In this document: piece after piece, positions 1-42,397 of the stretch | Layout of the letters: the number at the start of each line of letters is the position of its first letter | How positions within the stretch are numbered: the first letter of the stretch is position 1 | From: Octopus bimaculoides | Lineage: Eukaryota | DNA length: 50,608 nt | Assembly (NCBI RefSeq): GCF_001194135.2 | Contig: NC_068984.1 | Coordinates: 16,946,664 to 16,997,271 of the forward strand | Direction of reading: 5' to 3' | Notes under the pieces: model-generated | Databases searched by the model: none | Seen by the model: the letters and a program-made list of their open reading frames with translations, nothing else | Told to the model about the DNA's origin: nothing | Position numbers and translations under genes: made by a program

Positions 1-29
1 ATAGTGTAATTATCTCGGGCCAGGGTAAA

Positions 30-541
30 GACTTGCAGCTGCCAATAAGAATACGTGCATTCTTCTGGCAGCAAGTTTAATACCTTCCATAAATTGGAAT
101 CTAGAGAGTTATTGTTTTTAGTAACAGGTACAGATGTCTGGACGAATGACTACTCTTTTCACTGATCCCCACAATCTCTATTGTCTGAGTGTGCACCAAC
201 GAGTTTGTAGAAAGTACAAAATTTTTACTTTGGCTGACCTGAAAGTGAGTATACCCAAGATCTCCAAGAGAATTGTATGCAGCCCAAGAATCACTATATA
301 TTATGGACCCTTGGCGTATGTGGGGGGTAATTAACGGAATCTCGCCTTTCCTCTTTACCACACTCAGATGAAGGAGGTATCAAAAATTACTTTTTTGTTT
401 CGCGTTCTATTCTACCGAAAAGCCCGATGGTTTTTACAAGTCTTCCACGATTATATTTTCTCTTTACAATAACCGTCTCATCAATTTCCACTTCGACTCC
501 TGGCCCACCGATATGATCCTGGTGATTCTCTATCCAATGCC
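30..541 (-). pseudogene. Merlin (IS1595/ISXO2-like) DDE transposase remnant, copy A
   Basis: Minus strand reads HIGGPGVEVEIDETVIVKRKYNRGRLVKTIGLFGRIERETKK*, then after a frameshift IRQGSIIYSDSWAAYNSLGDLGYTH...HTQTIE. All three DDE motifs are present, but a stop and a frameshift break the frame. Confidence 0.9.
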
Positions 542-555
542 TGAAAAGAAAGATC

Positions 556-1865
556 GGCACTGTCATGGTATTAGCTGTCAGAAGTGAAAGTAGAAAAATC
601 TGCTAGTGAGCTATTTGTTTGCCTGTTGGTTTGAGTTGATACTTTGGCTACTGACTCGCCGGAGCGATCTCTATCTATCTAACTATCAATCACTCGTCCA
701 CCTTCTTAGAAAACACAAATTTAATATAAAAATATATTTTCTGAAATTGCAAATTATTTAAAATATAAAAATATAATTTTCAACAGAGAGAATTTATCAA
801 AATAGAAAACAAATGAAGTTTGAAGTTAAGTTTAAAAATAAATGTGATACTTATGCTCCGTAGATACTTACACTCTGTAATGTTTCAAACGCATGGATAT
901 AGGTGTCGAATTTGTTCCAATAACTTCTCGAAGATTTCGTCCTTAAATTCATAACGCCACATGAATTCAATCAGATGCGACTGCAGNNNNNNNNNNNNNN
1001 NNNNNNNNNNNNNNNNNNNNNNNNNNNNNNNNNNNNNNNNNNNNNNNNNNNNNNNNNNNNNNNNNNNNNNNNNNNNNNNNNNNNNNNNNNNNNNNNNNNN
1101 NNNNNNNNNNNNNNNNNNNNNNNNNNNNNNNNNNNNNNNNNNNNNNNNNNNNNNNNNNNNNNNNNNNNNNNNNNNNNNNNNNNNNNNNNNNNNNNNNNNN
1201 NNNNNNNNNNNNNNNNNNNNNNNNNNNNNNNNNNNNNNNNNNNNNNNNNNNNNNNNNNNNNNNNNNNNNNNNNNNNNNNNNNNNNNNNNNNNNNNNNNNN
1301 NNNNNNNNNNNNNNNNNNNNNNNNNNNNNNNNNNNNNNNNNNNNNNNNNNNNNNNNNNNNNNNNNNNNNNNNNNNNNNNNNNNNNNNNNNNNNNNNNNNN
1401 NNNNNNNNNNNNNNNNNNNNNNNNNNNNNNNNNNNNNNNNNNNNNNNNNNNNNNNNNNNNNNNNNNNNNNNNNNNNNNNNNNNNNNNNNNNNNNNNNNNN
1501 NNNNNNNNNNNNNNNNNNNNNNNNNNNNNNNNNNNNNNNNNNNNNNNNNNNNNNNNNNNNNNNNNNNNNNNNNNNNNNNNNNNNNNNNNNNNNNNNNNNN
1601 NNNNNNNNNNNNNNNNNNNNNNNNNNNNNNNNNNNNNNNNNNNNNNNNNNNNNNNNNNNNNNNNNNNNNNNNNNNNNNNNNNNNNNNNNNNNNNNNNNNN
1701 NNNNNNNNNNNNNNNNNNNNNNNNNNNNNNNNNNNNNNNNNNNNNNNNNNNNNNNNNNNNNNNNNNNNNNNNNNNNNNNNNNNNNNNNNNNNNNNATAAT
1801 ATATCTATAATTTGTTCACATTTCAATGTACTATTTTCTAGAAATATCGCGGTGATTAATTCCAT
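556..1865 (-). mobile_element. Merlin element copy B (mostly in an N gap)
   Basis: GGCAC-starting TIR-like end at 556, shared with the sequence at ~2073. C-terminus LQSHLIEFMWRYEFKDEIFEKLLEQIRHLYP* at 885-986 and FLENSTLKCEQIIDI at 1796-1865 flank the 987-1795 gap. Confidence 0.7.
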
Positions 1866-2072
1866 TTACACTGGGATATGCAGAAGTCATAGTGAAAATC
1901 CGAAAGTGAAAAACCTTCAACTAATTTTTTCACGTGTTGATTTCAAAGTGAACAACTTTGAATTACGCGCGCTGGTGGGGCTGATGGGTGTATCTGATTT
2001 GGTTGTTATTTCTAGCATGTAAATAGCCTGCTTGGGAAGTGGGAGGGGTTGAAATTTTGAATTTGAGATTTT

Positions 2073-2850
2073 GGCACTATCACGCTATTAGCTGTCAGAA
2101 GTGAAAGTGGTCGCTGTCTGTCTGCCTGTCTGCCTGCTGAGCTATCTGTGTGTCCGTCTGTCTGTCTGCCTGCTGGTTTGAGTTGATACTTTGGCTTACT
2201 TACTTACTGATATCTATCTACTATGTATCTATCTATCAATTATTAGAANNNNNNNNNNNNNNNNNNNNNNNNNNNNNNNNNNNNNNNNNNNNNNNNNNNN
2301 NNNNNNNNNNNNNNNNNNNNNNNNNNNNNNNNNNNNNNNNNNNNNNNNNNNNNNNNNNNNNNNNNNNNNNNNNNNNNNNNNNNNNNNNNNNNNNNNNNNN
2401 NNNNNNNNNNNNNNNNNNNNNNNNNNNNNNNNNNNNNNNNNNNNNNNNNNNNNNNNNNNNNNNNNNNNNNNNNNNNNNNNNNNNNNNNNNNNNNNNNNNN
2501 NNNNNNNNNNNNNNNNNNNNNNNNNNNNNNNNNNNNNNNNNNNNNNNNNNNNNNNNNNNNNNNNNNNNNNNNNNNNNNNNNNNNNNNNNNNNNNNNNNNN
2601 NNNNNNNNNNNNNNNNNNNNNNNNNNNNNNNNNNNNNNNNNNNNNNNNNNNNNNNNNNNNNNNNNNNNNNNNNNNNNNNNNNNNNNNNNNNNNNNNNNNN
2701 NNNNNNNNNNNNNNNNNNNNNNNNNNNNNNNNNNNNNNNNNNNNNNNNNNNNNNNNNNNNNNNNNNNNNNNNNNNNNNNNNNNNNNNNNNNNNNNNNATT
2801 ATTGTTGTTCCTGGTAATATCCGCTCTTGTAGAATCGGAATCTCCATAGC
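2073..2850 (-). mobile_element. Merlin element copy C (mostly in an N gap)
   Basis: 2073-2248 repeats the terminal sequence at 556-720 (ggcact.tca...tattagctgtcagaagtgaaagt; ggtttgagttgatactttggct). IPILQERILPGTTI at 2799-2847 is the Merlin motif that precedes the second catalytic Asp. Confidence 0.65.
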
Positions 2851-3427
2851 CTAAAACGTGGGATTCCGTTAAAAAAAAAAAATAAGGGGGGGAAAGATTC
2901 AGATTACATATAGTCCATCTGGACCGCGAGGGTCCAGACTAGTCATTTTCACAAAGTAATATAAAATAATATAAAATACAAACAATTAAATACAAGAAAA
3001 AAATTAAGGTGTTCACACACAGTGTAAACAAAATAAAATGAAAAAATAAGCAAGAAAAAATGAACAAATAGCTATTAAATTATACAACGAACAAAATAAA
3101 ATGAAAAAATAAGCAACACACGTGTTTACGAACAGTCTAGCCCATAGGAAATGACAGAATAGGGATTAATACCATATACACCGTTACAGCAGTAACTGTA
3201 TTCAACTGAATAGACGTCAGTGATTGGTTGAAATTATCCGAAATAAGACAATTTTTTAACGTGAAATAACTTCGAATACAAAATTTTTTTATCTGTTCTA
3301 TAACACAAAATATACAAGTATACGAAGTTTGAAAGTGTTTCGGTACCAAAAACACTACATAAAACATAAATGAAAAGTGGTGCCCGTCAATTCAGAAAGA
3401 CCCCTTACCTTTCGCCCCAGAAAAACA

Positions 3428-3661
3428 TCAATACATGTCAAACCATGTGTCTTTCCTCACTGACACAGACTCCATGCATTCTCGGTGCGAGCATCGCCAG
3501 TACATATTCCCACCACGTCTTTTTGTATTCATAACATGCTTCTTCCTTTTACATAATTTTCTTTGGGGTAAAACACCCGTTTCTTGTGGGTACGACACAG
3601 CATCCTCCTCCGTCCTCAGTGTCCCCATCATAGAAGCGAGGTTGCCGGAGCTTGCTGCCAT
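3428..3661 (-). pseudogene. Merlin transposase N-terminal Zn-finger fragment (77 aa)
   Basis: MAASSGN...AVSYPQETGVLPQRKLC...YWRCSHRECMESVSVRKDTWF* matches the Merlin N-terminal C..WRC..C..S(I/V)RK.TF pattern. The frame stops right after it. Confidence 0.7.
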
Positions 3662-3811
3662 AGTCGAACAAACTTTAAAATTATTCACTTTCGGAAAGTT
3701 ATGATGAAACAAAGTTGGGCGGGTGGGTGAATCACACATGTGGAGGTATACCCGAAAAAGTACACAGGAATATGTTGAGACGAATCATCTTTTACAAACT
3801 TTTCAAAAATC

Positions 3812-4699
3812 TCATTGTGGGTAAATTTCCGCAATATGATTTATAAAGGTCTTATAATTTTCCCAAGATTTATCGCATTTCATGTGGTAGAATTCTCTGT
3901 ACACGGCCTCCTCCACGTGCAACCATCTCATGTTCCCGCTCGATCCGGATTTATATTTCAGTTTACTTTTTATTCGGGAGCAATATGCCTCCACATGATT
4001 GGTAGTTGCACCACTCTCTGGGTCCACAAAATTCCGAGAGTGGTCCACAGTATTGTGGATATAGCCAAGTCTTTGGAGTTCACGGTAACTGGCCCACTCA
4101 TCTGTAAATATAATGGACCCTTGTACTACATTTTCCATTATGACCGCCTCCACTGTCTCTGCCTTTGTATCTGGAATGTGTTGCATGTATCCTATCTTCT
4201 GAGTGTTGTCGTAGAATCCAACAACCCAGAATGACTGTTCAACATGTTCAACTTGATTGTTGTCTTTGAACATTAAACATTTCTTTACTTCTACAACATG
4301 ATTTGGGCCACCCAATTTCTTTCTGTTTCTTATTAATATTTTCGAACATATTTCGCGGCAATACTGATACCATTGAATGGCCGTACACTTGCTGACATTG
4401 TTCATGGACATTGAGCTTGATACTGGCATTTCGCAGATGAAATCTAATATTATGCTAAAAATTTTGAAGACTGGCAACTGACTTCTTTCTAGAAATGTAT
4501 TCTTCCGAATTGAGACAGTTTTCTTGCACTTGCGGCATCTCCAAGTAACGCCGTCTGTTGCACGCTGGAAGGGTAATACGGACATTTCATTACGGCATGA
4601 ACATCTCTTATCTTGTGAAATTAATTTATTCTCCTGTAAATACTGCACAAAATAATCTTTGGACAGTAGTTTCATCATCTCAAACCTTGGACTATCCAT
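3812..4699 (-). CDS. Intact single-exon Merlin/ISXO2-like transposase-derived protein, 295 aa, first catalytic Asp lost
   Basis: Uninterrupted ATG-to-TGA ORF. Contains the CxC..WRCxxC Zn region, SIRKNTFLE, LGGPNHVVEVKK (canonical VEIDE), GSIIFTDEW, HNTVDHSRNFVDP and TTNHVE. Confidence 0.85.
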   Translation of the reverse strand: MDSPRFEMMKLLSKDYFVQYLQENKLISQDKRCSCRNEMSVLPFQRATDGVTWRCRKCKKTVSIRKNTFLERSQLPVFKIFSIILDFICEMPVSSSMSMNNVSKCTAIQWYQYCREICSKILIRNRKKLGGPNHVVEVKKCLMFKDNNQVEHVEQSFWVVGFYDNTQKIGYMQHIPDTKAETVEAVIMENVVQGSIIFTDEWASYRELQRLGYIHNTVDHSRNFVDPESGATTNHVEAYCSRIKSKLKYKSGSSGNMRWLHVEEAVYREFYHMKCDKSWENYKTFINHIAEIYPQ

Positions 4700-6554
4700 T
4701 TTCAGTAATAAGAATTAAAAATTTGTTTAAAAAAAGTTTAAAAGTTTCATGTATAATGAAATTATTGTTTCGACTTCCGCGATATAACACCTCCGAATTT
4801 CTTTTCAATTGTGGCGACGTATCACGAATTTTCCCGCCGATGTACCAGAATTAATTTCTATTCCAAAGAGGGGGAGGTATTCTATGAACTTGTCATTACA
4901 ATGTATTACCTCGTTGCATTAAGAGATTTATAAGAATAAGCTGACTTCTTAAGTCTCCCCAAGTTCAAGATGGGAGCAGGGCTGATTAGAAATGTAAAAC
5001 CCCTGTTTTATTGTTTGACCGCATTTAGTGCACACACAAAAACAGAGAGAGGAGTTGATCAAAAGAATACGAATAAAATTGTAACTGAGTACATTTTCGT
5101 AATTTGCATAAATTAATTTGCATAATTAACGAAGTTTTCAGTACGAGTTATTTGGCATCAAAGTTTAAATAGATATGCAAAATAGAGATTTAGAAAAGAA
5201 AAAAAAATCAGAAGTCTTAATTTGCCCTGCATACGCACAACATTACAGTTCTACAATTGATATTACGACAAAACTTTTATTTTCGTCTTCGTGATGGGCG
5301 GATTTACAAACCTGGTTTTAGATAAAATAAATAAATATATAAATAAATCAATAAAATCCCTCAAGATTTGCGGATTTTACTAAATTCTTCAGAAATCGCA
5401 CAAATTAAAAAACCCTCAAATTTGAGAATTTTAGCGTGTGGTTATGTGTTTTTTTTTTTATCTTTCATAAATCCTAAAGTAAAATGAAAAGGATTTTTTT
5501 TTTCTAACAATAATTTGCCCATACTTTATTGTGTTGATAAATAATTATTCTGAGTATAGATTAAAATTGAGAAAAATCGAAATTCAATGCGTTGTTAATC
5601 TGAGGAAAAAGTACTTTCCAGGCATTTAGCTGTTATTTCTAGCATACCGAACTTTCTGGCGAGGGCTTTATTATTTTCGTCTGCAGTTTCAGGAGTAATG
5701 TACGCATGCACAAAAGAACTTATACACTACATAAAACATTTGGTTTCGTAAGGGGTGGAGAGCAATGGAGGATGTTTTCTAAAAGTTAAAATTCAAAAAC
5801 ATTTTTTGTTTTCAAACTGGTCATCTACGTATATTATTAATAAAATGTCGGAAAAAAATGAAAAATAAAAAAATGGTGGAGAATTAAAATTTTGAAAACT
5901 TCTTTTTTTTTTGCAAAATCGTAATCCACGATATCGTAAACATTTGTTTGGTCTGTTGAAAACTGACAGACGAAACAAAAATGTTGTAAAAATACGGAGA
6001 TCCTTTGAATAATACGGCGAAGAAGGATATTTAGTAAAAGAACTGTTGCGTCTAAAAAATTGTAAAACCGCGGGAGAAAAAAATTATTTACTACCGAAAT
6101 CGAGCTGGGTGTGAAACTATAAATTTACCTTTTTTTCTTCAACGTTTTTTTTTAATGTTACCATCTCAATTAATTTCCTAATATATCGCAAATGCGTTTT
6201 TCATTAACCAAACAAAATTTTGCAGAACTTAGAAATTCACTCATAGAATGTAAATTCACAATCCTCACAGAAAGACATATTCCTTCAACTTTAAAAACCG
6301 AATAAAATTATAAATAATTGATCGGAAATCCCTAAGCATCTATGTGATTGGCCTTATTATATACGTCATAAAAATACTGTCCAGTAATTGTGAACAGGAC
6401 GGCATTGTTCGATCTGGTAAAAGATTCGATTTCAGACCGAGCGGTGCCACACCATTAAAAACTTTCAGTGGCGTACTGTCACTACCATCGATTTCGTTTA
6501 TATGACAGGTACTATATTTTATCGAACCCGAAGAGGTGAAAGTCAAAGTTACCT

Positions 6555-7704: not shown

Positions 7705-7796
7705 GCCCGCATAGCTCAGTCGGTAGAGCATCAGACTTTTAAGACTCTTTCTAAGAAGGAATCTGAGGGTCGTGGGTTCGAGTCCCCCTGTGGGCG
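7705..7796 (+). tRNA. tRNA-Lys-TTT: tRNA-Lys(UUU) with a 19-nt intron (7742-7760)
   Basis: Acceptor stem GCCCGCA/TGTGGGC; D arm TAGCTCAGTCGGTAGAGC; anticodon stem TCAGA/TCTGA with TTT at 7738-7740; intron between positions 37 and 38; T loop TTCGAGT (one T.C mismatch in the T stem); discriminator G. Confidence 0.92.
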
Positions 7797-9844: not shown

Positions 9845-10012
9845 ATGGCTGATTCACGACGTTGTTATGCGGCACTCTTGAATGGTTTAGCTAGAAGAAA
9901 CTATTTTGGTGAAAAAGAATTAAGCAATGGAGTCTTGAAAGAACAAATATATCCCAAACTATCGGATGAGGAATTTGAACATCTTGTCACAAAATGTACA
10001 GCTCTTATAAAG
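9845..10012 (+). CDS. COMMD1: COMM domain protein 1, exon 1 of 3 (56 codons)
   Basis: MADSRRCYAALLNGLARRNYF...QIYPKLSDEEF...ALIK followed by AAG|gtaaaa (phase 0). Resembles the COMMD1 N-terminus. Confidence 0.9.
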
Positions 10013-11300
10013 GTAAAAACTACACACAATCTTTAAGACACACCCCTTCAAATCAGCTGATATCCCTTCAATTATATTACAGTTATAATTTCTAAAAACT
10101 TTTATTCATAAATTTATTGACATAAAAGCCCTTCGAATGACTTTCTGTTTAATGTGGTAACCCTCTGCTATCGTATATTATTTTCTTTATCATCATTTAG
10201 CGTAGGTTAGCGTAGCCACATTGTTAGATAGTTGTCCAATATAATTTATCCCTTACTTCATTCAAACATGACTTCTACTCTCTCAATTTCGACTGGAAAG
10301 TAGACAGTTTGCTAAGTAGCTAGAAAAAGCAGCCATCCAAGTAGAAGTACTATCATTCAAAATAAATGGGTGATTTGAGAATGAGCACTGGTATGGATAA
10401 GCAAGCCAAAACTCGCTTCTAATACACCTATCATCAAGTATTGCAGAATTCTCTAACTGCAAAAGGCTATTTTCGTTGATATGAGTACTAGAGAATACGT
10501 TGTTATTCTACACAACTATTCTTACTGCTTATAATATAGAACTGTATTTTTCTGTAATTCGGTACCTTTGTTTTAATATCGACGGATTCGCTGGTAAATA
10601 CCATGGTTGAGGTCCTATGTAATCGGCGCTTCGTATGAGTTTGGAATGCTCATTTTGTGTCTTTCAAAGATTTTATTTCGAATTTTAATATTATCAAGAA
10701 AACTGAAATATATCCTCTTCAAATTTCTATTTATTCCATTTACAAAATTATGTTTGAAATCGTACAACTTTTGATCATTTCACTTTGATAAAAAAATAAT
10801 TAAAAAAAGTAGCATGTTTGAATCAACATTGGTATGTATAACAACTAGCAGAACATTCTACATTTTGAAATGTTCTTATTTCTATTTTGAATTTTAATAT
10901 CATTTTTGGTAATTTGAGAAATTTGATAGAAAACACTGGAAGTATAACTACAGTTCAGTATCCCTTGACATTGTTTCCTCATAACAAATATTGTATGTAT
11001 GTTTTTTTTAATGAAATTTTGCAGAGATCGTTTTCAAAGGTGTGGATTGCAATTATTTTGATAACATTAAAATTAGAAGGAGGGGATGTTTCGGATTATT
11101 CTATTCCCTCATTGTTTTCTTATAACTCTCTTTAAAATGCATATTTTTAAATGGCATTTTGCAGAAATACATAATGTTGGTGCTTCAAACATACATCTGA
11201 AAAAAAAAAGTGGAAAATGTTTAAGTTCCAGAACGATCCAAAGGAATGATCCAAAACTCCTCCTTAAAGCGTTTTTTCCCTAAATTTTATCAATCTATAC

Positions 11301-13224: not shown

Positions 13225-14031
13225 TCGTCTCTTGTCCGCAAAGATCACTGTTTGCCTTTCATGTAAATTGAGAAATTTATTCTGAAATACTTGAAATTAT
13301 CTGCCCTTTTCTCTGAGAGTTGCTACCAATTGCTGCTACTAGGTTTTTGTTTTCTATCTCTAACTCAGAGAAATTTTAATAAATCAAAAATTTTACAGAC
13401 AGCATTCAGTACATCACCCTTTAATTTAAGTATAAAATGTATTATTTGATACATTTCGAAATAAATCTTTTAATATTGGAGTAACAATAAATTGTAATTT
13501 GTTTCTTAGTAGTTCCAGCCTTTTTTATGCTGTATGAATATCACAGAAGAACATTTAAATGGAGTTAAGTCAAAAAGAATCTCTACACAAGTGCTCAACC
13601 TGCTAGAAATAACACTCTCATGTTTTATAAAAAAAGATAAATTGAACAATGTAGTTCTAGATATATAAAGAGATGGGATGATCATGACTTGGAATGTATT
13701 TGATCACTGGGCCTTTCAGTCAGAGCTGACTTGGGAGCCATACAAGCAACAACTAAAAAGGGACACAGGCATGGCTGTGTGGTAAGAAGCTTGCTTCCCA
13801 ACCACATGGTTCCGGGTTCAGTTCCACTGTGAGGCACATTGGGTATCTTCTACTATAGCCTCTGGCCAACCAAAGCCTTGTAAGAGGATTCGGTAGATGG
13901 AAAGTGAAAGAAGCCCATTATATATACATTACACACATACACACACAAGCAAAAAATGTTAAGGTGAGAAAAAAATAGTAAAGGTAGAGTAATATGCTTT
14001 TATTATAGCTGCAAAATTTTCTCAAATTTTT

Positions 14032-14034
<3 letters not shown>

Positions 14035-14108
<74 letters not shown>
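14035..14108. repeat. (TA)n microsatellite
   Basis: About 37 perfect TA units. Confidence 0.95.
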
Positions 14109-14236: not shown

Positions 14237-14572
14237 TATATGCATACATACATACATAAATGTGTGTATCTTTGTATGTGTGTGCCCATCCCTGCTTGAC
14301 AACTGGTGTTGGTTTGTTTATTTCCCCATAACTTTGCAGCCTGGCAAAAAGCAACTGGTAGAATAAGTACCAGACTGCAGCCCAATGTCTGAAACAAGTA
14401 AAAAATAAAAGATTATAACATTGATGTAGGTAATAATGGAATGTGGGAAATAAAGTAGAATTATGGAGGAGGTACAGAACTAAAATTCTAATTGTTAACC
14501 ATTATGTTAGCCATTTTCTCTGATATTGTTTCGTTACATTTTTTTCCATACATTTCTATTCTTTTTATGAAG

Positions 14573-14881
14573 AGTATGGTTGCCGTTGACATGGATTTCA
14601 ATCAACTGGAAGCTTTCTTGACATCTCAAATTAAAAAGGCTGATAGTGGAATGAATGAAGAACGAGCTAATGCTGTCCGTAAGTTCTGGAAGAATCAAAG
14701 GAACAAAATTCATGACGTTCAAGTTCAACAAACACAATGGAACAGTTGTTTGAAGCAAATGTCTTGGAGAATTGATTTAAAATCTCAAGCAAGACACATT
14801 GAACAAATTGATAAACCTACAGCCATTGTAGAATTAATGGTTTCAAGTAATTCACAGACCACAGATGATGAAAGTAAAAAG
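14573..14881 (+). CDS. COMMD1: COMMD1 exon 2 (103 codons)
   Basis: ag|SMVAVDMDFNQLEAFLTSQIKK...KFWK...QMSWRIDLKSQARH...PTAIVEL...KK|gtaaat. The DMDFNQLEAFLT motif is characteristic of COMMD1; phase 0-0. Confidence 0.95.
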
Positions 14882-14954
14882 GTAAATTGTCATTCAATAT
14901 ATTATTAGACTATGTTGAATAAACTGCTGTTGGTAATTGAAATATGAGAATAAA

Positions 14955-17422: not shown

Positions 17423-18499
17423 TTGGAAACAATGAACACTGCTTGTATGATGGTGACACTCATTTACAACAATCACAATTCATATACATATGCATATACA
17501 TTAAGAAAGGCATCTAGCTGTGGAAATAATCCAGGCTGGATCCATCACTGATATTTTAATTATTTTTTTTTAACTAAACAGTTTGAAACTTGGTATGCTG
17601 GTGCAATTTCTCGCACTGAACACGGTTTACTTTCAACATTTTTGAGAAAATTTCATATTTTAAAAGTTATTTCATGTTGAAGTTGTCATATTTGGATAAT
17701 TTTAACCAATCAACAATGTGTATTCAGTTGAAGAAAGCTACTGCTGTTTGTGATAGTAATCGAAGAGGAACAACTTCCAGGTCATCTCCACTAAATGTCA
17801 CCACTCTGCTCTATTTGTATGTCAAGCGAAGGGAAAGTGTTGCTCCTTGGTCATAGCTGACACAAAAGAGAAGCTTTTGGCCACAAGAAAGACGATGCCA
17901 CCTTTATCTATTCTTTACTCTTTTCCTCTCTACTGGCAGACAGCCACTTATACACTATCAACTACCAAACAGTGAATGAACTTGTCACTACCACTACAAC
18001 TACTACATCTCTAACTACATGACAGACAAACAAATAACTATATGTAAATAATATTTCTTCCTTCTTGGTGTTGATTCTTTGATGTTTACTGGTTACTCCA
18101 ATGCGAGAACCCCCAAAAAATAAAAGCGTGTAATATGCAACACAGGCAGTAGCTTTCTTCAACAACTTTAAACATGAAATAACTTCTAAAACATGAAATT
18201 TTGTCAAAAATGTTGAAAGTAAACCATGTTCAGCATGAGATATTACACCAGTATACGAAGTTTCAAACTGTTTAATTAAAGAAAAATCTGTGATCAAAAC
18301 TGAACAGATCCATAACGCCGAAGCTCGATGCAGTCCTCTGGTTTGCCAGCTCATGTTGAACAGTTCAATCCATGCCACAATGGAAGACATGTTAAAAAGA
18401 TGCTTGCTCAAGGTTCTGCATAGTGAGACAGAACTTGAAGTATGTAACTGGAAAGTGAACATCTCAACCACACAGCTATACCCACAAAAACTTTTAGTG

Positions 18500-34409: not shown

Positions 34410-34860
34410 TGATAATAATAATAATAATAATAATAAAATTATTGTGTATGGTGCTCAGGTGCACTACAACTCATCAAAGGTGCATGTACAGTACATAGAA
34501 TTATGTGCAAAAGTCAGGAAAGTGAACAGTGTATGAGTTATGATATACATGTGTGCATGTGCAAGGAGATGGGGATATCAGGTATAGTGTTGGCAAATTT
34601 CAGGACGCTTGGAGGTTTTAAAGGATGCAATGTCTCAGCAACTAACACCTGATGCAGGTAGTTTGTTCCATGCTTCAGCAACTCTGAGTGTGGAAAAATG
34701 TTTCTGAAAGTCATGGGAGCTGTGCTGTTTTCTGGCTTTGTAGGTATNNNNNNNNNNTGTGCTGTTTTCTGGCTTTGTAGGTATGCCCATGTGTGTTTGA
34801 CACATGGAGCTCAAAAAGGTGTTCAAGGTGGTTGTTGGCATGATGGTTAATAATTTATGC
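34410..34860 (-). mobile_element. CR1/L2-like LINE 3' end with (TTA)n tail
   Basis: Minus strand encodes HFSTLRVAEAWNKLP (F...RV...WN.LP motif). Homologous to 44105-44335 and 49900-50520. Confidence 0.6.
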
Positions 34861-34879
34861 TATTGATATTAATATTTAT

Positions 34880-35075
34880 ACAAGATAGTGAACTGGCGTG
34901 AAATACTTAGTGGTATTTCATCCGTCTTTATGTTATGTTCAAATTCTGCTGAGGTCAACTTTGCCTTTCATCTTTCAGGGTCGATAAAATAATACCAGTA
35001 ACACACTGGGGTTTGATATAATTGACTTACCTACTACCCTGGGATTGCTGGTCTTGTGCTAAAATTTGAAATTGA
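34880..35075 (+). mobile_element. SINE, family C
   Basis: gttcaaattctgctgaggtcaactttgcctttcatc...taccagtaacacactggggt. Confidence 0.65.
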
Positions 35076-35119
35076 TATTAATATTTATACAATATTAGGG
35101 TATTATAGATCTGTTTCAT

Positions 35120-35370
35120 GAAGGTGTGTGGCTTAGTGGTTAGGGTGTCAGTATCATGATCGTAAGATTGTGGTTTCGATTCCCGGACCAGGCGACATGT
35201 TGTGTTCTTGAGCAAAACACTTCATTTCACATTGCTCCAGTCCACTCAGCTGGCAAAAATGAGTAACGCTGCAATGAACTGGCGTCCCATCCAGCTGGGA
35301 AACACATACGCCATTGAAACCAGGAAACTGGGCCTATGAGCCTGGCTAGGCTTTAAAAGGGCACAAAAGA
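35120..35370 (+). mobile_element. tRNA-derived SINE, family E
   Basis: tggcttagtggttagg...ggtttcgattcccgg head followed by gtgttcttgagcaaaacact and gctccagtccactcagctg. Confidence 0.6.
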
Positions 35371-35894
35371 TAGAAAAAGAAAGATCTGTTTCAGCTGATT
35401 TTACCAATTGGTTTCACTCACGAGTTAGGGGGAAATCCAAACTGGTGCTTATCAGAGGGGCTGACACAAAAAGTATGGTAACAACTTTCTATTGGTCTAA
35501 GGGTATAATTCTCACTTGGGGTGCAAAAGGTCCTGAGTTCATTTCCCAGATAAGCTTGATGCAATTCTTGGAACAAATGTTATTAATATTACATAAAAAA
35601 TGTATTTCCAATTTTATTTTTAAATATTTAAAATTTTATGAAACGGAGCAAAATAAATTAAAATTCTTGCTCAGAGATGAACTTCTTTAATCGTTTGTTT
35701 CAGACATTAGACTGTGACCATCCTGGGGCACTGCCTTAAAGAATGTTTTTTTTTTTTTTTTTTTAGTTGAACAAATCAACCTCAGTACTTTTTTTTTTTT
35801 TTAATTCTGGTAATTTTTCTACCATTCTCCAACTTCCAAATATTTTTTTATTACTGTTTTCATTATATCTGACATTTAATGAAATGTGAAATTT

Positions 35895-36160
35895 CTATAG
35901 AATGTTATCTTCTGCTGTTTCAGTTTTAGTGCTCACTGTTAAAGAAATGTATCTTTTAGATTTGTGACCAACTATTGTTGCAACAACAAGGAATAAAAAT
36001 GATACTATTTGTATGATAGTTAAGAGAATAAAAAATCTGAGTCTAAATTCATTTAAGTTATACATCATGCAGGCACCAGTGTCTCGACAAGGTAGGAGAC
36101 CCCATTTAATACAGGTGTTGTCTACCAGCATACCAAATAGTGGCGGTGCAGGAATCCATC
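35895..36160 (-). CDS. SLCO: SLCO/OATP organic anion transporter, last coding exon
   Basis: ttcag|(G)WIPAPPLFGMLVDNTCIKWGLLPCRDTGACMMYNLNEFR...*, the OATP TM11-12 motif IP.P..FG..+D..C..W...C...G.C..Y; phase 1. Confidence 0.92.
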
Positions 36161-36339
36161 CTGAAATGATAAAGCTTAAATGTTAGTTTTGAAAGTTCCA
36201 CAAACGAGAGAAAAAAATCTTTTATTTAAAACTCTGAGGCTTATAACACCCTTGTCTCAGACCAATTATGATGGAACTGTGTCAGTGATCAGGTTGCAGA
36301 TAGTACAACAAAAATTTTGGCCCAGATAATTCTTTTATT

Positions 36340-37205
36340 GTTTTACTTGTTTCAGTCATTTGACTGCAGCCATGCTGGAGCACTGCCTTTAGTGGAACGA
36401 ATTGACCCTGGAATTTATTCTTTGTAAGCCTAGTACTTATTCTATCGGTCTTTTTTACTGAACCGCTACGTTATGGGGACGTAAAAACACCAAATTCGGT
36501 TGTTGACCAACGTTGGGGGTCAGACATAGACACACAAACATACATACATACTTATATATACGAGGGTGAGTCAAAAAGTAATGCAATTTTGTTTAGGACA
36601 GGTATAATTACCAACAGCTGGTCCTCCATGGATCACATCCCTACTTCTCAACATAGTCACCATTTCTCTCAATAGCAATGTTCCACTTTCGAATGAGAGC
36701 ATGTATCCCTGCTCCATAAAATTCTGTTGACTGTTCTTTGAGCCACTTCTTCACTACAGTTTTCACTTCCTCGTCACTCTCAAACCCTCTTTCATGGGGC
36801 TGAGGAGATGATAGTCCAGTAATGAGGAAGTGAAAACTGTAGTGAAGAAGTGGCTCAAAGAACAGTCAACAGAATTTTATGGGACAGGGATACATGCTCT
36901 CATTCAAAGGTGGAACATTGCTATTGAGAGAAACGGTGACTATGTTGAGAAGTAGGGATGTGATCCATGGAGGACCAGCTGTTGGTAATTATACCTGTCC
37001 TAAACAAAATTGCATTACTTTTTGACTCATCCTCACATATATATATATATGACAGGCTTCTTACAGTTTCCACCTATCAAATCCACACTTTGGTCAGCCC
37101 AAGGCTATAGTGGAAGACACTTGCCCAAGGTGCCACACAGTGGGACTGAACCAGGAACCATGTGGTTGGGAAGAGTTTGGTAGAGAAACTGTGTGGAAGC
37201 CTATC
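36340..37205 (-). mobile_element. Family A SINE carrying a nested mariner fold-back element
   Basis: SINE 3' part at 36340-36560 and head at 37040-37205, on either side of the insert. Confidence 0.75.
36561..37035. mobile_element. Mariner-derived palindromic (fold-back) element, ~475 bp
   Basis: Arms of ~218 bp (36561-36778 and 36818-37035) are near-perfect reverse complements with a ~39-bp spacer. Each arm is the TIR plus the transposase 3' end. Inserted at TA. Confidence 0.9.
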
Positions 37206-37686
37206 ACATGAGTGTGTACCCTCCCACCACCAGCTGACAACTGATATTGGTTTGTTTATGTTCCTGTATCTCAGCAGTTTGGCAAAACCAGACTTTAAAA
37301 AAATAAGTGCCAGGGTCAATTTAATAACACATAAAACTATTAAATTTCAAATTATTTTGGAACTGTGCCAAAGACCAGGTTACAGTCGTGTCTCCTGAAA
37401 TAATTCAATATTAATCTAAAATAATTCTAGGTGTTATTAAATGGCTAGAATGACTCTCAGATGTTGTTCCTTCAGTTCCCACACATGAAGTCAGATCAAG
37501 TTACTTGCTACACAACACTGAAATATAATATTTGTGATTTTTTTATAATGAAGAGATTGAAGACATATTTACTTTTTGTTGAAGTCGTGTCTTATTTATT
37601 AGAAAGTTTACTCTGCTTGATATTGTTTTTATAGAGAAAACATATGGATGGAATTAAAATCATAACTCTAAAACTTGAAATCTTAC

Positions 37687-37751
37687 CTATAAGTGTTGAA
37701 GTGAAGATAAATATAGAAAATGGGACAGCCTTATCTGATTCACCAACACAC
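37687..37751 (-). CDS. SLCO: SLCO/OATP coding exon (65 nt)
   Basis: ttccag|(K)CVGESDKAVPFSIFIFTSTLI(G)|gtaaga. Phases 2 and 1 link the neighbouring exons in frame. Confidence 0.88.
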
Positions 37752-37845
37752 CTGGAACAGAATATGATATTTAGAAAGTTATTGTTAGAAAAAGTTCTTT
37801 TTGAGTTATATATATATATATATCTATACTATATCTATCTATCTA

Positions 37846-37884
<39 letters not shown>

Positions 37885-38047
37885 GACTAGGGTGTTGGAA
37901 CTCCTACATTGCTAGAAATAAGAGCTAAAATGCTCTCATGCTGCAATCAAAGCACATAATTGTATACTTATATACTGACCTGTCAGTATATAAATATATT
38001 TAGTGACAATTATAATTTTCATTTTCGCTAACATATTGCTGTCTATA

Positions 38048-38083
<36 letters not shown>

Positions 38084-38311
38084 AGGAATAGCAGTCATGA
38101 GATGGAAAAGGTATCAAATTTCATAGTGCAAGAGCTGTGAGCGTGTATTCCATTACTGGCATTATGCTAAACAGACATTGAACTTACCTGCCTTTACAAG
38201 TATACTGTATAGAAAACCCCGCTGACATGGAAAAGGCAAGCATAAAAATAATGATGGAAATTATATATATCTGTGTGTGTGTGTGTGTGTGTGTGTGTGC
38301 ATAAACACACA

Positions 38312-38528
38312 TGAGGGGTTGCTGAGAAGTTCCTGGCTTTGGGTAAAAGAAAATGCAGGAGGATCAGTTAATTATGATTTTATTCAACATATTCCCATCT
38401 CAGATTCACACATTTATTGCAGTGGTCCTTCAGTTTTTCTAAACCCGCTAAAAGAACTCTGAAGGTTGGACTTCCAAACAGATCTTTCATGATACCCGTA
38501 CAGCCAGGTACTTTTCAGCACCCCCTTG
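38312..38528. mobile_element. Mariner-type MITE (~217 bp)
   Basis: TIRs tgaggggttgctgagaagttcctggct / agccaggtacttttcagcacccccttg, followed by TA. Confidence 0.75.
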
Positions 38529-39343
38529 TATGTATGTATATGTGTGCACGCACGTGTGTGTGTATTATGATATATATATATATATATATANNNNNNNNNN
38601 NNNNNNNNNNNNNNNNNNNNNNNNNNNNNNNNNNNNNNNNNNNNNNNNNNNNNNNNNNNNNNNNNNNNNNNNNNNNNNNNNNNNNNNNNNNNNNNNNNNN
38701 NNNNNNNNNNNNNNNNNNNNNNNNNNNNNNNNNNNNNNNNNNNNNNNNNNNNNNNNNNNNNNNNNNNNNNNNNNNNNNNNNNNNNNNNNNNNNNNNNNNN
38801 NNNNNNNNNNNNNNNNNNNNNNNNNNNNNNNNNNNNNNNNNNNNNNNNNNNNNNNNNNNNNNNNNNNNNNNNNNNNNNNNNNNNNNNNNNNNNNNNNNNN
38901 NNNNNNNNNNNNNNNNNNNNNNNNNNNNNNNNNNNNNNNNNNNNNNNNNNNNNNNNNNNNNNNNNNNNNNNNNNNNNNNNNNNNNNNNNNNNNNNNNNNN
39001 NNNNNNNNNNNNNNNNNNNNNNNNNNNNNNNNNNNNNNNNNNNNNNNNNNNNNNNNNNNNNNNNNNNNNNNNNNNNNNNNNNNNNNNNNNNNNNNNNNNN
39101 NNNNNNNNNNNNNNNNNNNNNNNNNNNNNNNNNNNNNNNNNNNNNNNNNNNNNNNNNNNNNNNNNNNNNNNNNNNNNNNNNNNNNNNNNNNNNNNNNNNN
39201 NNNNNNNNNNNNNNNNNNNNNNNNNNNNNNNNNNNNNNNNNNNNNNNNNNNNNNNNNNNNNNNNNNNNNNNNNNNNNNNNNNNNNNNNNNNNNNNNNNNN
39301 NNNNNNNNNNNNNNNNNNNNNNNNNNNNNNNNNNNNNNNNNNN

Positions 39344-39380
<37 letters not shown>

Positions 39381-39381
<1 letters not shown>

Positions 39382-39880
39382 TTGCTCAGAGTAAAAGGTA
39401 GACTGTATTATGCATGTGTGTGAAAAGCCATGCTACATGGCAGTGAAACATGGGCCATGACTGCTGAGGGTACGTGTAAGCTTGCAAGGAATGAAGCTAG
39501 TATGCTCTGCTGGATGTGTAATGTCAGTGTGCATACATGACAGTGTAAGCGCCCTGAGAGAAAAGTTGGACATNNNNNNNNNNGTGTAAGCGCCCTGAGA
39601 GAAAAGTTGGACATAAGAAGCATCAAATGTGATATGCAAAAGAGATGACTGTGCTGGTATGGTCATCTGTTGCATATGGATGAGGGCAGCCGTGTGAAAA
39701 AGTGTCACACCCTAGCAGTAGAGGGAACCTGTGGAAGAGGTAGGAAGACCTGGGATAAGGTGGTGAAGCACAACCTTCAAATATTCGGTATCACCAAGGC
39801 GATGACAAATGACCGAGACCTTTGGAAATATGGTGTGCTTGAGAAGACCCAGCAAGCCAAGTGGGACCGTAACAGTGGCC
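39381..39880 (+). mobile_element. RTE-clade LINE 3' coding fragment
   Basis: GRLYYACV..AMLHGSETWAMT...WYGHLLHMDEGSRVKKCHTLAVEGTCGRGRKTW...NDRDLWK, broken by stops and frameshifts. Confidence 0.85.
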
Positions 39881-40367
39881 TATGCCAGTGCTGTATAACC
39901 AACCCATTTAAGAGTACCCTTCAATCATTGGGCAACAAACTGTGCTTGCGAAGACATGTTGAGGCAAATGAAGTTGTTGTCGTGGCCGATGACAGTACCG
40001 CCTGATTGGTACCCATGCTGGTGGCATGTAAACAAGCACCATTCAAGTGCAGTTGATGCCAGTGCTGCTTGACTGGTCCCATGCTGGTGGCACGCAAAAA
40101 GCACCATTTGAATGTGATCATTGCCAGTNNNNNNNNNNCACTCTCAGAATGGATGGCATTAGGAAGGGCATCCAGCTGTAGAAACATTGCCAAATCAGAT
40201 TGAAGCCTGGTGCAGCCTTCCGGCTACCATCCAACCCATGCCAGCATGGAAGGCAGATGTTAAATGACAATGATGATAATATATATGTGCACCAGCACAC
40301 GGTGGTGCACCAGCATGACCGCAGCCACTTGGCTGAAACACATAAATAAATAAATAAATAAATATAT

Positions 40368-40745
40368 ATATCATCATCATCATCATCATCGTTTAACGTC
40401 CGCTTTCCATGCTANNNNNNNNNNNNNNNNNNNNNNNNNNNNNNNNNNNNNNNNNNNNNNNNNNNNNNNNNNNNNNNNNNNNNNNNNNNCTCAGAGAGTG
40501 TAGTGGGTGCTTTTACGTGTCACCCGCACGAAAACGGCCACGCTCGAAATGGTGTCTTTTATGTGCCACCCGCACAAGCCAGTCCAGGGGCACTGGCAAC
40601 GATCTCGCTCGAAAATCCTACAGGAGCCAGTCAGGCGGTACTGGCAACGGCCACGCTCAAAATGGTGCATCTCATGTGCCACCCGCACAAGAACCAGTCC
40701 AGGGGCACTGGCAACGATCTTACTTGGCTTGCCGGGTCTTCTCAC
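40368..40745 (-). mobile_element. Family B retroposon with an internal tandem repeat
   Basis: (CAT)n tail; repeated units gtgccacccgcacaag..ccagtccaggggcactggcaacgatc. Confidence 0.65.
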
Positions 40746-40759
40746 GCACAGCCCATTTC

Positions 40760-40795
<36 letters not shown>

Positions 40796-41514: not shown

Positions 41515-41810
41515 TAAGGCGGCGAGCTGGCAGAAACGTTAGCACGCCGGGCGAAATGCTTAGTTCTGAGTTCTGCTACGTTCTGAGTTCAAATTCCGCC
41601 GAGGTCAACTTTGCCTTTCATCCTTTCGGGGTCGATAAATTAAGTACCAGTTACGCACTTAATCTCTTTGTCTGTCCTTGTTTGTCCCCTNNNNNNNNNN
41701 TTTCATCCTTTCGGGGTCGATAAATTAAGTACCAGTTACGCACTTAATCTCTTTGTCTGTCCTTGTTTGTCCCCTCTATGTTTAGCCCCTTGTGGGCAAT
41801 AAAGAAATAA
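41515..41810 (+). mobile_element. tRNA-derived SINE, family C
   Basis: aaggcggcgagctggcagaaacgttagcacgccgggcgaaatgctt...gagttcaaattccgccgaggtc, (AAAT/AAAG) tail. Confidence 0.8.
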
Positions 41811-41896
41811 GAAATAGAGAAATTATGACTTGATAGTAAACTAACCAGATCCTGTCTAGTGTTTATCTGTCTGGAGAGCTCTAAACGTGGAGGAGT

Positions 41897-42290: not shown

Positions 42291-42397
42291 CACCAGAGCT
42301 CTGAACAAATTCTCTTCTCTGGTAATGAATAAATCGTTATGCATATTATAAACTGATATTTATTTAAATGATAAAAGAAGAACATGCAACAACTTAC

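What the first reader, a model, noticed from the sequence alone, without database searches (positions are those of the whole stretch)
3812..4699. Candidate domesticated Merlin transposase: intact ORF with a disabled DDE site
Seen: an uninterrupted 295-codon ORF whose first catalytic motif is VEVKK (KK at 4280-4285) instead of VEIDE. The basic KRKYNRGR linker is replaced by KDNNQVEH. The Zn-binding Cys residues, the second Asp (FTDEW) and the N-x-x-E motif (TNHVE) are kept. I found no GGCAC-type TIR at its ends, and the neighbouring copy A has an intact triad but is decayed by a stop and a frameshift. Established: DDE transposases need the full triad; an intact frame with a lost catalytic residue and lost TIRs is the usual signature of a domesticated transposase; Merlin is the eukaryotic relative of IS1595. 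Inference: this may be a host gene for a catalytically dead DNA-binding protein, either a transcription or chromatin factor or a dominant-negative repressor of Merlin elements. I am not aware of a described cephalopod case.
Basis: partly seen in the sequence, partly recalled or inferred. Interest (0 to 1): 0.8.

Follow-up and report, generated by a model that had tools for sequence, protein, structure and literature searches.

The report
Full-length but catalytically dead octopus Merlin transposase
An Octopus bimaculoides Merlin transposon gene has kept its full 295-codon frame while losing a residue needed to cut DNA, which may mean a co-opted DNA-binding protein or only a lucky dead copy; the data here cannot decide.

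Summary
Window 3812-4699 (-) is an uninterrupted 295-codon Merlin/IS1595-type transposase ORF from Octopus bimaculoides chromosome CM046604.1. The first catalytic Asp and the next Glu are Lys-Lys (codons at 4280-4285). D200 and E237 (spacing 36) and all four Zn-finger Cys are kept.

For selection:
- omega is about 0.15 against the closest relative (61% aa, dS saturated), with no net indel in 295 codons.
- Changes on the window lineage are biased to third codon positions.
- Amino-acid changes cluster in the catalytic strand and loop.
- A simulation shows a neutral copy stays open only below about 2-3% divergence.

Against a settled host gene:
- The ORF sits in an element-sized block (about 1.2 kb) that it shares with the relative, including a 77-nt 3' non-coding block at 83% identity.
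- It heads a roughly 10-kb one-directional pile of decayed Merlin fragments and assembly gaps.
- About 17% of representative Merlin ORFs also carry triad substitutions.
- O. bimaculoides has many Merlin copies.

Orthology, copy number and expression could not be tested; a COMMD1 control showed that the databases lack close Octopus species.

Verdict: a plausible but unproven candidate. I put about 0.4 on a selection-maintained dead transposase and about 0.4 on a relic.

The parts
3812..4699 (-). Uninterrupted 295-codon Merlin/IS1595-type transposase ORF, stop codon included.
   Evidence: ORF listed. Pfam PF12762 scores 58.5 bits. The exact protein is called on O. bimaculoides CM046604.1. AlphaFold2 model pLDDT 95.4.
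4526..4603 (-). N-terminal zinc-finger region. The four conserved Cys codons are C33 (4601-4603), C35 (4595-4597), C55 (4535-4537) and C58 (4526-4528). All four are kept.
   Evidence: These columns are Cys in 86-99% of the 93 relatives, and the window keeps all four. The model shows small beta strands at 38-43, 51-55 and 61-63.
4280..4285 (-). Codons K139 (AAG) and K140 (AAA), which replace the first catalytic Asp and the conserved Glu of the V-x-I/V-D-E motif on strand beta1.
   Evidence: Sequence. D occurs in 83 of 89 and E in 82 of 89 sequences at these columns. Strand beta1 spans residues 135-144. D to K needs two base changes from GAC.
4238..4267 (-). Codons 145-154, the beta1-beta2 loop: KDNNQVEHVE in place of the basic (K/R)RKxxxGRxV. 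Changes are R146D, K147N, G151E and V154E.
   Evidence: Alignments. K147 is 97% and G151 87% conserved. Window-specific changes are enriched in codons 139-154: Fisher p = 0.001, or 1e-4 on the strict set. pLDDT is about 80 in this loop.
4100..4102 (-). Codon D200, the second catalytic Asp (FTDEW). It is kept.
   Evidence: It sits at the end of strand beta4, residues 196-200.
3980..3991 (-). Codons E237 to C240. The catalytic Glu of TNHVE is kept, 36 residues after D200. The conserved Trp three residues later is replaced by Cys (W240C).
   Evidence: Trp is present in 93% of relatives at this column.
3733..3811 (-). Conserved non-coding block directly 3' of the stop codon. It is 83% identical over 77 nt to the block that follows the P0002 ORF (L002 1460-1536). 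Likely the element's 3' subterminal or terminal region, or a conserved 3' UTR element.
   Evidence: The differences show no third-position bias in the only open frame (my reading of alignment A2). It is far better conserved than synonymous sites (dS 1.5-1.8). Homology to L002 stops at 3733.
4851..4877 (-). 5' conserved 20-mer (4851-4870, 95% identical to L002 350-369), directly preceded on the - strand by a C-run, CCTCCCCC (4870-4877). The C-run starts 178 nt upstream of the ATG. Possible remnant of the 5' end of the element.
   Evidence: In the related element L012 the C-rich TIR starts 180 nt upstream of its ATG. No inverted partner was found in the window or in L001.
3437..3728 (-). Adjacent decayed Merlin fragment B. 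It has a C-rich 5' end (3713-3728), an ATG at 3659-3661 and an N-terminal zinc-finger-like segment that ends in a stop. It abuts the 3' block of the ORF unit.
   Evidence: tblastn hits, ORF, C-run.
16..539 (-). Copy A: a P0006-like Merlin fragment covering residues ~135-314. It keeps VEIDE and KRKYNRGR but is broken by a stop and two frameshifts.
885..986 (-). C-terminal end of another Merlin copy (...FEKLLEQIRHLYPCV*), which runs into an assembly gap at 987-1795.

Best explanation
The ORF encodes a Merlin (eukaryotic IS1595-like) transposase derivative that cannot carry out DDE catalysis. It has nevertheless been kept open by purifying selection after the active site was lost.

Shown:
- The first metal-binding Asp on strand beta1 is Lys, and the adjacent Glu is Lys.
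- The basic beta1-beta2 loop has become neutral to acidic.
- The zinc-finger cysteines, the RNase H-like fold, the second Asp and the Glu are retained.
- The window lineage evolved mainly at synonymous positions, at the same amino-acid rate as its closest relative.

Inferred: the protein still binds DNA, most plausibly Merlin element ends, and may still multimerise, but cannot cleave. It would then act as a competitor or repressor of the many Merlin elements in this genome, or as a co-opted DNA-binding factor. Whether the beneficiary is the host (true domestication) or the element lineage (a transposon-encoded regulator) cannot be separated here.
For: Selection on the ORF:
- The frame is intact, and the ORF is exactly 295 codons, as are P0002 and P0003. 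There is no net indel against P0002 at 61% aa and 70% nt identity.
- dN is 0.25 and dS 1.5-1.8, giving omega 0.14-0.17.
- Lineage-specific base changes by codon position are 23/14/49 for the window lineage (chi-square p = 1e-5). P0002 gives 27/24/48.
- The amino-acid relative-rate count is 36 against 35.

Local burst in the catalytic region:
- Seven of the 36 window-specific replacements fall in codons 139-154: p = 0.001, or 1e-4 on the strict set.
- They include multi-base codon changes such as GAC to AAG and an Arg to Asp change that needs 3 base changes.
- No hidden frameshift explains them.

Neutral decay fits poorly:
- A neutral copy keeps this frame with probability 0.07 at 2% divergence, 0.0014 at 5% and below 1e-4 at 8%.
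- At 2-3% divergence, four or more hits in the 9 bases of codons 139-141 have probability 2e-5 to 9e-5.
- So the active-site changes look older than a neutral ORF could survive.

Pattern of what is kept:
- All 8 deviations at the 36 highly conserved columns lie in the catalytic domain. None lies in the zinc finger or linker.
- The fold is predicted with pLDDT 95.4.

Copy number and ends:
- No copy more than 61% identical appears among 5.8 billion protein clusters. That set includes at least 11 O. bimaculoides Merlin gene models.
- No TIR pair was detected, while relatives L013 and L012 have clear TIRs.
Against: - No orthologue, transcript or copy-number data could be obtained. The databases do not even return O. 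bimaculoides or close-Octopus COMMD1. The apparent single-copy status is therefore weak.
- The ORF still lies in an element-sized unit of about 1.2 kb shared with the P0002 locus. A 77-nt 3' block is 83% identical, and a 5' motif sits where L012 has its TIR. This looks like a transposon, not a long-settled gene.
- The ORF heads a run of at least 6 Merlin-derived segments on one strand over about 10 kb, interrupted by N gaps.
- Triad substitutions occur in about 16 of 93 representative Merlin ORFs.
- O. bimaculoides had 191 Merlin protein hits in a survey (PMC8101967). O. vulgaris has recently active low-copy Merlin families (PMC13282606). A few chance-intact dead copies per genome are therefore expected.
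- The purifying-selection signal cannot be dated. It may all predate inactivation.
- The clustered changes could come from one complex mutational event. P0002 has such an event, a -4/+4 compensated frameshift.
- Another cephalopod COMMD1 locus has no Merlin within 10 kb upstream.
Confidence: 0.4

Rival explanations
1. It is a functionless relic: a dead copy of a low-copy octopus Merlin lineage whose frame is still open by luck or youth. The purifying-selection signal dates from when its ancestors were active elements. The catalytic-site changes are recent, possibly from one clustered mutational event. The protein, if made at all, does nothing that is selected.
For: - The ORF is embedded in an element-like unit with conserved non-coding flanks.
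- It sits in a nest of decayed Merlin fragments with assembly gaps.
- Relatives P0003 and P0004 are bona fide transposons of 1.05-1.13 kb with TIRs.
- About 17% of representative Merlin ORFs have triad substitutions.
- The genome is rich in Merlin (191 protein hits, PMC8101967). Recently active Merlin families exist in O. vulgaris (PMC13282606).
- A neutral copy at 1-2% divergence is still intact 7-26% of the time.
- Complex local events do occur in this clade, as in P0002.
Against: - Eight deviations at 36 highly conserved columns, needing at least 12 base changes, imply roughly 5-15% neutral divergence if they all arose after death. At that divergence the frame survives with probability of about 1e-3 or less.
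- At 2-3% divergence, four or more changes in the 9 bases of codons 139-141 have probability below 1e-4.
- The window lineage shows no excess of amino-acid change over P0002 and a stronger third-position bias.
- No stop, no frameshift and no loss of the start codon is seen.
Confidence: 0.4
2. The ORF matters only as part of a one-directional cluster of Merlin fragments, for example a small-RNA (piRNA-type) source locus or a tandemly rearranged transposon array. Under this reading, its coding capacity is incidental.
For: - At least 6 Merlin-derived segments from different subfamilies all lie on the same strand over about 10 kb (L001 10001-19626).
- There are internal repeats of 250 bp at 91% identity and about 80 bp at 82%.
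- Proteins with 9-12 Merlin-like stretches exist elsewhere (P0010 and P0011). Merlin arrays may therefore recur.
Against: - Six of six segments on one strand has a chance probability of only about 0.03.
- No small-RNA data are available.
- This reading does not explain why this one copy keeps a perfect 295-codon frame while all its neighbours are broken.
- N gaps make the structure of the array uncertain.
Confidence: 0.1
3. It is still an active transposase, using another acidic residue (for example E137, on the same face of strand beta1) in place of the missing Asp.
For: - E137 lies two residues before K139 on the same strand.
- D200 and E237 are retained.
- Merlin families with highly imperfect TIRs are reported (PMC8101967).
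Against: - E or Q at position 137 is the family norm and coexists with D139 in 83 of 89 sequences, so it is not a substitute.
- Two lysines now sit at the metal site.
- K147, G151 and W240 are also lost.
- No TIR pair and no target-site duplication were found.
- No close copies were seen.
Confidence: 0.04

Closest known systems
Merlin superfamily DNA transposons (Feschotte 2004) and the bacterial IS1595 family; Pfam PF12762 DDE_Tnp_IS1595
   Same: - It has an N-terminal zinc finger of four Cys followed by a DDE_Tnp_IS1595 catalytic domain, about 295 aa in one exon.
- The second Asp and the Glu are spaced by 36 residues, with the N-x-x-E and downstream Lys signature.
- Relatives P0003 (L012) and P0004 (L013) are compact elements of 1.05-1.13 kb with C-rich TIRs.
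   Different: - The first catalytic Asp and the neighbouring Glu are Lys-Lys.
- The basic loop and Trp240 are lost.
- No TIR pair or 8-9-bp target-site duplication can be recognised.
Candidate Merlin domestications proposed in protists (Stentor, Symbiodinium, Perkinsela, Bodo saltans; PMC8101967)
   Same: The argument is the same: a preserved Merlin transposase ORF, no TIRs or target-site duplications, and in several cases a DDE motif that is not conserved.
   Different: - Those cases have some support from synteny between species or from segmental duplication. Here no cross-species comparison was possible.
- This would be a metazoan (cephalopod) case.
- None of these candidates, this one included, has functional evidence.
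Catalytically inactive transposase-derived regulators and host genes, such as the P-element KP repressor and the pogo-derived CENP-B (named from my own knowledge, not tested here)
   Same: The proposed working principle is the same: the transposase's DNA-binding and multimerisation parts are kept without cleavage. The result is a competitor for element ends or a new DNA-binding factor.
   Different: - Those come from different superfamilies.
- They have demonstrated expression, binding and, for host genes, orthologues conserved over long periods.
- KP is an internally deleted protein, not a point-mutated full-length one.
Retroviral integrase catalytic core (RNase H-like fold)
   Same: These are the best structural matches of the predicted model (ASV integrase core, TM 0.64-0.68 normalised to the target). 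The order of strands and helices carrying the triad positions is the same.
   Different: There is no detectable sequence relationship (10-17% identity). The match shows only the general DDE fold.

Membership tests
Merlin / IS1595-type DDE transposase (protein family) | [quoted passage not shown] | tested here: met
   Pfam PF12762 scores 58.5 bits against a cut-off of 27. The prokaryotic NCBIfam IS1595 model scores 68.7 bits, below its cut-off of 75. There are 6808 relatives at E <= 1e-3.
Merlin / IS1595-type DDE transposase (protein family) | Complete D-D-E catalytic triad. | tested here: not met
   The first Asp is Lys (K139), whereas D is present in 83 of 89 aligned sequences. D200 and E237 are present with a spacing of 36.
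Merlin / IS1595-type DDE transposase (protein family) | N-terminal zinc finger. | tested here: met
   C33, C35, C55 and C58 are kept at columns that are 86-99% Cys. The Pfam zinc-finger model itself was not hit at E <= 0.1.
Merlin transposable element (mobile unit) | Terminal inverted repeats flanking the gene. | tested here: not met
   No inverted partner was found for either conserved flank within the window or L001. The Smith-Waterman score was 24, against 21 +/- 2.7 for shuffles. As a positive control, L013 shows a perfect 23-bp TIR.
Merlin transposable element (mobile unit) | Target-site duplication of 8-9 bp. | tested here: inconclusive
   The 8-mer ATACCTCC (- strand) occurs at 4873-4880 and at 3742-3749. 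However, homology to L002 continues beyond it on both sides, so it is probably internal.
Merlin transposable element (mobile unit) | Multiple dispersed copies in the genome. | not testable with these tools
   The O. bimaculoides assembly cannot be searched here. Among called proteins, none is more than 61% identical.
Domesticated (host-co-opted) transposase gene | ORF kept under purifying selection after loss of mobility or catalysis. | tested here: inconclusive
   Omega is 0.14-0.17 with a third-position bias on the window lineage. The active-site changes look too old for a neutral ORF to have survived. The selection cannot be dated without closer relatives.
Domesticated (host-co-opted) transposase gene | Single-copy orthologues at the syntenic position in related species. 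| not testable with these tools
   The databases return no close-Octopus sequence even for the neighbouring COMMD1. The one distant cephalopod COMMD1 locus (L006) has no Merlin within 10 kb.
Domesticated (host-co-opted) transposase gene | Loss of the transposon's non-coding ends. | tested here: inconclusive
   There is no TIR pair. However, a 77-nt 3' block at 83% identity and a 5' motif are shared with the P0002 locus.
Domesticated (host-co-opted) transposase gene | Transcription and translation in the host. | not testable with these tools
   No expression data are available. The P0001 protein cluster has one member on one contig.

The most novel reading that the evidence does not exclude
This may be the first Merlin-derived gene co-opted in an animal. 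The protein would be full-length and catalytically dead, with a charge-reversed active-site strand and loop (DE...RRK..GR became KK...KDN..EH). Selection would maintain it in Octopus as a sequence-specific DNA-binding factor. One possible role is repression of the unusually abundant Merlin elements of octopus genomes. Its conserved 3' block would have been re-used as a regulatory element.
Probability: 0.3. Interest if true: 0.6.

Novelty: new member of a known kind. Interest (0 to 1): 0.4.

Why it matters
Merlin is one of the few DNA-transposon superfamilies with no established co-opted gene in animals. Only protist candidates have been proposed (PMC8101967).

Octopus genomes are unusually rich in Merlin sequences. 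A selection-maintained, catalytically dead Merlin transposase would be a new route of transposon domestication in cephalopods. It would also be a natural dominant-negative variant for studying how IS1595/Merlin enzymes recognise their ends, and no structure of these enzymes is solved.

If it is only a relic, it is an ordinary dead transposon copy. In that case it shows that an intact frame plus a lost catalytic residue is not enough to call domestication in a transposon-rich genome.

Tried and rejected
**Synteny test.** I queried COMMD1 exon 1 to fetch orthologous loci.
- Only distant species came back (75% and 55-57% identity).
- L006 has no Merlin within 10 kb upstream of COMMD1. L007-L009 have INTS7 there instead.
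- Non-coding DNA is not alignable at that distance, and INTS7 was not found in L001 or L006.
- The test therefore does not decide. It also shows that 'no orthologue in the database' is uninformative.

**Identifying the species behind P0002 (SRR11869384/85/90/91).**
- Paper searches found nothing relevant.
- There are no shared repeats with the window.

**TIR search** with the repeat finder, Smith-Waterman against shuffles, and blastn-short.
- No pair was found for the window unit.
- L002 gave a marginal 27-nt pair whose score equals the best of 200 shuffles.

**Could the clustered catalytic-loop changes be a compensated frameshift or a 9-nt duplication?** Rejected for the window, because the other frames show no hidden motif. 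P0002 does have such an event.

**Could the 3' block be coding?** Rejected. Its differences fall 6/5/2 by codon position in the only open frame (my reading of A2).

**Is P0002 the orthologue?** Unlikely. The O. bimaculoides protein P0005 is closer to P0002 (69%) than the window ORF is (61%).

**Sequence search of solved structures.** No IS1595/Merlin structure was found.

**N-terminal versus catalytic-domain distribution of deviations at conserved columns.** Not significant (0 of 8 against 8 of 28, p = 0.10).
Full report
**Source and observation**

The exact protein of the ORF is called on Octopus bimaculoides assembly GCA_001194135.2, chromosome CM046604.1, near 16.95 Mb. COMMD1 lies 5.1 kb away in divergent orientation.

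The ORF is real: 3812..4699 on the minus strand, 295 codons, ATG start in a good context (GAAAATGG), with an in-frame TAA five codons upstream.

It matches Pfam DDE_Tnp_IS1595 at 58.5 bits against a cut-off of 27. It matches the prokaryotic NCBIfam IS1595 model at 68.7 bits, just under that model's cut-off of 75.

Bases 4280-4285 read AAG AAA on the minus strand, which are K139 and K140.

**The catalytic residues in family context**

In a six-sequence alignment and a 94-sequence family alignment:
- the K139 column is Asp in 83 of the 89 sequences with a residue there;
- the K140 column is Glu in 82 of 89.

The loop that follows is (K/R)RKxxxGR in the family and KDNNQVEH here.

Retained features are D200, E237 (spacing 36), N234, K244 and the four zinc-finger cysteines.

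I also found W240C, R178T, L183V and N219D. In all, the window protein deviates at 8 of the 36 columns that are at least 80% conserved. All 8 lie in the catalytic domain. This ranks 77-78 of 81 full-length family members; the median is 2.

**Structure**

An AlphaFold2 model built on the family alignment is confident (pLDDT 95.4, pTM 0.91). It places K139/K140 on beta1, D200 at the end of beta4 and E237 on the next long helix.

Its best matches among solved structures are retroviral integrase catalytic cores. This confirms the RNase H-like fold and that K139 occupies the first metal-ligand position. No IS1595/Merlin structure is in the PDB by sequence.

**Relatives**

| Relative | Identity to window ORF | Source |
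|---|---|---|
| P0002 | 61% | four short-read assemblies of unknown species, loci L002-L005 |
| P0017 | 66% over 126 aa | representative library |
| P0005 | 59% over 65% of the query | decayed O. bimaculoides gene model |
| P0003 | 45% | L012 |
| P0004 | 41% | L013 |

At least 11 O. bimaculoides 'ISXO2-like transposase' models fall in this clade at 33-60% identity. None is closer.

A published survey counted 191 Merlin protein hits in O. bimaculoides, the most among the protostomes listed (PMC8101967). O. vulgaris has two recently active Merlin families with 11 near-full-length insertions (PMC13282606).

P0004's contig carries a perfect 23-bp TIR (CCCCCTGTAAAACAATATAAAAT). P0003's contig carries an imperfect C-rich TIR. 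Both contigs start at the TIR, as expected for multi-copy elements of 1.05-1.13 kb. The family is therefore a real, compact transposon family.

**Selection signal**

With corrected starts, the window ORF, P0002 and P0003 are all exactly 295 codons. The window ORF and P0002 align without any gap.

Between them:
- dN = 0.25 and dS = 1.5-1.8 (saturated), giving omega = 0.14-0.17;
- with P0003 and P0004 as outgroups, the window lineage has 36 specific amino-acid changes and the P0002 lineage 35;
- polarised base changes fall 23/14/49 on codon positions 1/2/3 for the window lineage (chi-square p = 1e-5);
- the same count for P0002 is 27/24/48.

The window lineage has therefore evolved mostly under purifying selection, and no faster than its relative. 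This cannot by itself separate selection as an active transposon from selection after inactivation.

**How old is the inactivation?**

Seven of the 36 window-specific replacements lie within codons 139-154 (Fisher p = 0.001). On the strict set, it is six of 18 (p = 1e-4).

They need at least 10-11 base changes in 48 bases. These include D to K (two changes) and R to D (three changes). No alternative frame hides the ancestral motif, so this is not a compensated frameshift.

A simulation of neutral decay of this ORF used an AT-biased spectrum, kappa 2 and an indel-to-substitution ratio of 0.1. The probability of keeping the frame, start and stop was as follows:

| Neutral divergence | Probability ORF stays intact |
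|---|---|
| 1% | 0.26 |
| 2% | 0.07 |
| 3% | 0.018 |
| 5% | 0.0014 |
| 8% | below 1e-4 |

At 2-3% divergence, four or more hits in the nine bases of codons 139-141 have probability 2e-5 to 9e-5.

The simple relic model is therefore squeezed from both sides. The active-site changes look too many for a copy young enough to be intact by chance. This is the main argument for selection after loss of catalysis.

It has three escape routes:
- One clustered mutational event could have produced the changes. P0002 shows such an event, a -4/+4 frameshift pair that scrambles the NHSRNF motif.
- The genome has many Merlin copies, so a few chance survivors are expected.
- The ancestral state is inferred from few relatives.

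**Transposon features that remain**

The homology between the window and L002 does not stop at the ORF.
- The 77 nt after the stop codon (3733-3811) are 83% identical to L002 1460-1536.
- That is better than first or second codon positions of the ORF. The substitution pattern is not coding-like.
- Homology ends sharply at 3733.
- Upstream, a 20-mer (4851-4870) is 95% identical to L002 350-369, and weaker similarity runs to about 4915.
- On the minus strand the 20-mer is directly preceded by CCTCCCCC (4870-4877), which starts 178 nt before the ATG. In L012 the C-rich TIR starts 180 nt before its ATG.

The ORF thus still sits in an element-sized unit of about 1.2 kb.

Neither end has an inverted partner anywhere in the window or in L001, which adds 6.2 kb beyond the left edge of the window. 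No convincing target-site duplication is present.

The 8-mer ATACCTCC occurs at both 4873-4880 and 3742-3749. L002 has similar 8-mers (ATGCTAC and ATATCTAC) at the matching places. Homology to L002 continues outside them, so I treat them as an unexplained internal direct repeat.

The strong conservation of the 3' block means it was functional in the window lineage until recently. It could be a transposon end or an mRNA element.

**Context**

Directly 3' of the unit lies a decayed Merlin N-terminal fragment with its own C-rich 5' end (3437-3728). Further along the same strand there are:
- assembly gaps;
- a Merlin C-terminal end (885-986);
- copy A (16-539, triad intact but frame broken);
- two more decayed copies beyond the window.

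That makes at least six Merlin-derived segments of different subfamilies, all on one strand, over about 10 kb. This looks like a transposon nest or array, not a gene neighbourhood, and the N gaps make its structure uncertain.

**What could not be tested**

Orthology, genome copy number and expression could not be tested.

A query with COMMD1 exon 1, a housekeeping gene next door, returned no O. bimaculoides or close-Octopus protein. It returned only hits at 75% and 55-57% identity. The lack of a close homologue of the ORF in the protein collections therefore says little.

In the 75%-identity cephalopod locus (L006), no Merlin lies within 10 kb upstream of COMMD1. This argues weakly against an ancient syntenic gene.

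**Base rate**

Sixteen of 93 representative relatives also carry at least one substitution at a triad position. An open frame plus a lost catalytic residue is therefore not by itself a strong signature in this family.

**Verdict**

I put about 0.4 on a catalytically dead Merlin derivative kept open by selection. Such a protein would bind DNA without cutting. It would be either a host-co-opted factor or a transposon-encoded competitor or repressor. Either would be useful in a genome with many Merlins.

I put about 0.4 on a functionless relic, about 0.1 on the ORF being incidental within a one-directional transposon cluster, and a few percent on residual activity.

It is a new member of a known kind. 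If the co-option reading were proven, it would be the first animal Merlin-derived gene. A genome BLAST and a three-species synteny check would settle most of this in an afternoon.

Noticed in passing
window 16-4699 (-) and L001 10001-19626: At least six Merlin-derived segments from different subfamilies all lie on the same strand over about 10 kb, separated by N gaps (987-1795, 2249-2797 and about 2.8 kb left of the window). There are also internal repeats: L001 11429-11674 matches 17517-17762 at 91%, and L001 12460-12537 matches 14010-14084 at 82%. This could be a transposon nest, a tandem array or a small-RNA source locus.
   Followed up: partly
window 3737-3773 and 3953-3997: The 3' non-coding block is an inverted repeat of the coding segment for HVEAYCSRIKSKLKY. 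The local alignment scores 32, and 0 of 300 shuffles reach it. The repeat is absent from L002, and both arms changed in the window lineage in ways that raise complementarity. It could form a hairpin in the mRNA, or it could be a trace of a template-switch mutation.
   Followed up: partly
window 4873-4880 and 3742-3749 (- strand ATACCTCC): The same 8-mer occurs in direct orientation near both ends of the unit of about 1.2 kb. L002 has ATGCTAC and ATATCTAC at the matching positions, so the two ends seem to co-vary between lineages. It is not a clean target-site duplication, because homology to L002 continues outside it.
   Followed up: partly
L002 1215-1260 (P0002 residues ~217-224): The closest relative, P0002, carries a compensated -4/+4 frameshift that scrambles the highly conserved NHSRNF motif into ENLAQKS, yet it keeps the 295-codon frame. 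Its catalytic domain may also be impaired.
   Followed up: partly
window 7705-7796 (+): A tRNA-Lys(UUU) gene with an intron of about 20 nt after the anticodon loop, followed by a T-run (Rfam tRNA 58.3 bits). ARAGORN reported it only as tRNA-???.
   Followed up: yes
window 9846-10013 (+) and 14571-14890 (+): COMMD1 exons 1 and 2, oriented divergently from the Merlin ORF. In a more distant mollusc (L007-L009), the gene upstream of COMMD1 is INTS7, only about 1.7 kb away. INTS7 was not found within the 16 kb upstream in O. bimaculoides.
   Followed up: partly
proteins P0010 (1750 aa) and P0011 (1611 aa), representative library: Two very long predicted proteins contain 9-12 separate Merlin-transposase-like stretches (about 30% identity to the window ORF). 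This suggests tandem Merlin arrays, or gene models fused across them, in some other genome.
   Followed up: no
window 34748-44488: The right part of the window holds eight more assembly gaps, 10-753 N each. The composition there swings widely (GC 0.25-0.40, GC skew up to 0.18), so this region of the assembly is fragmentary.
   Followed up: no
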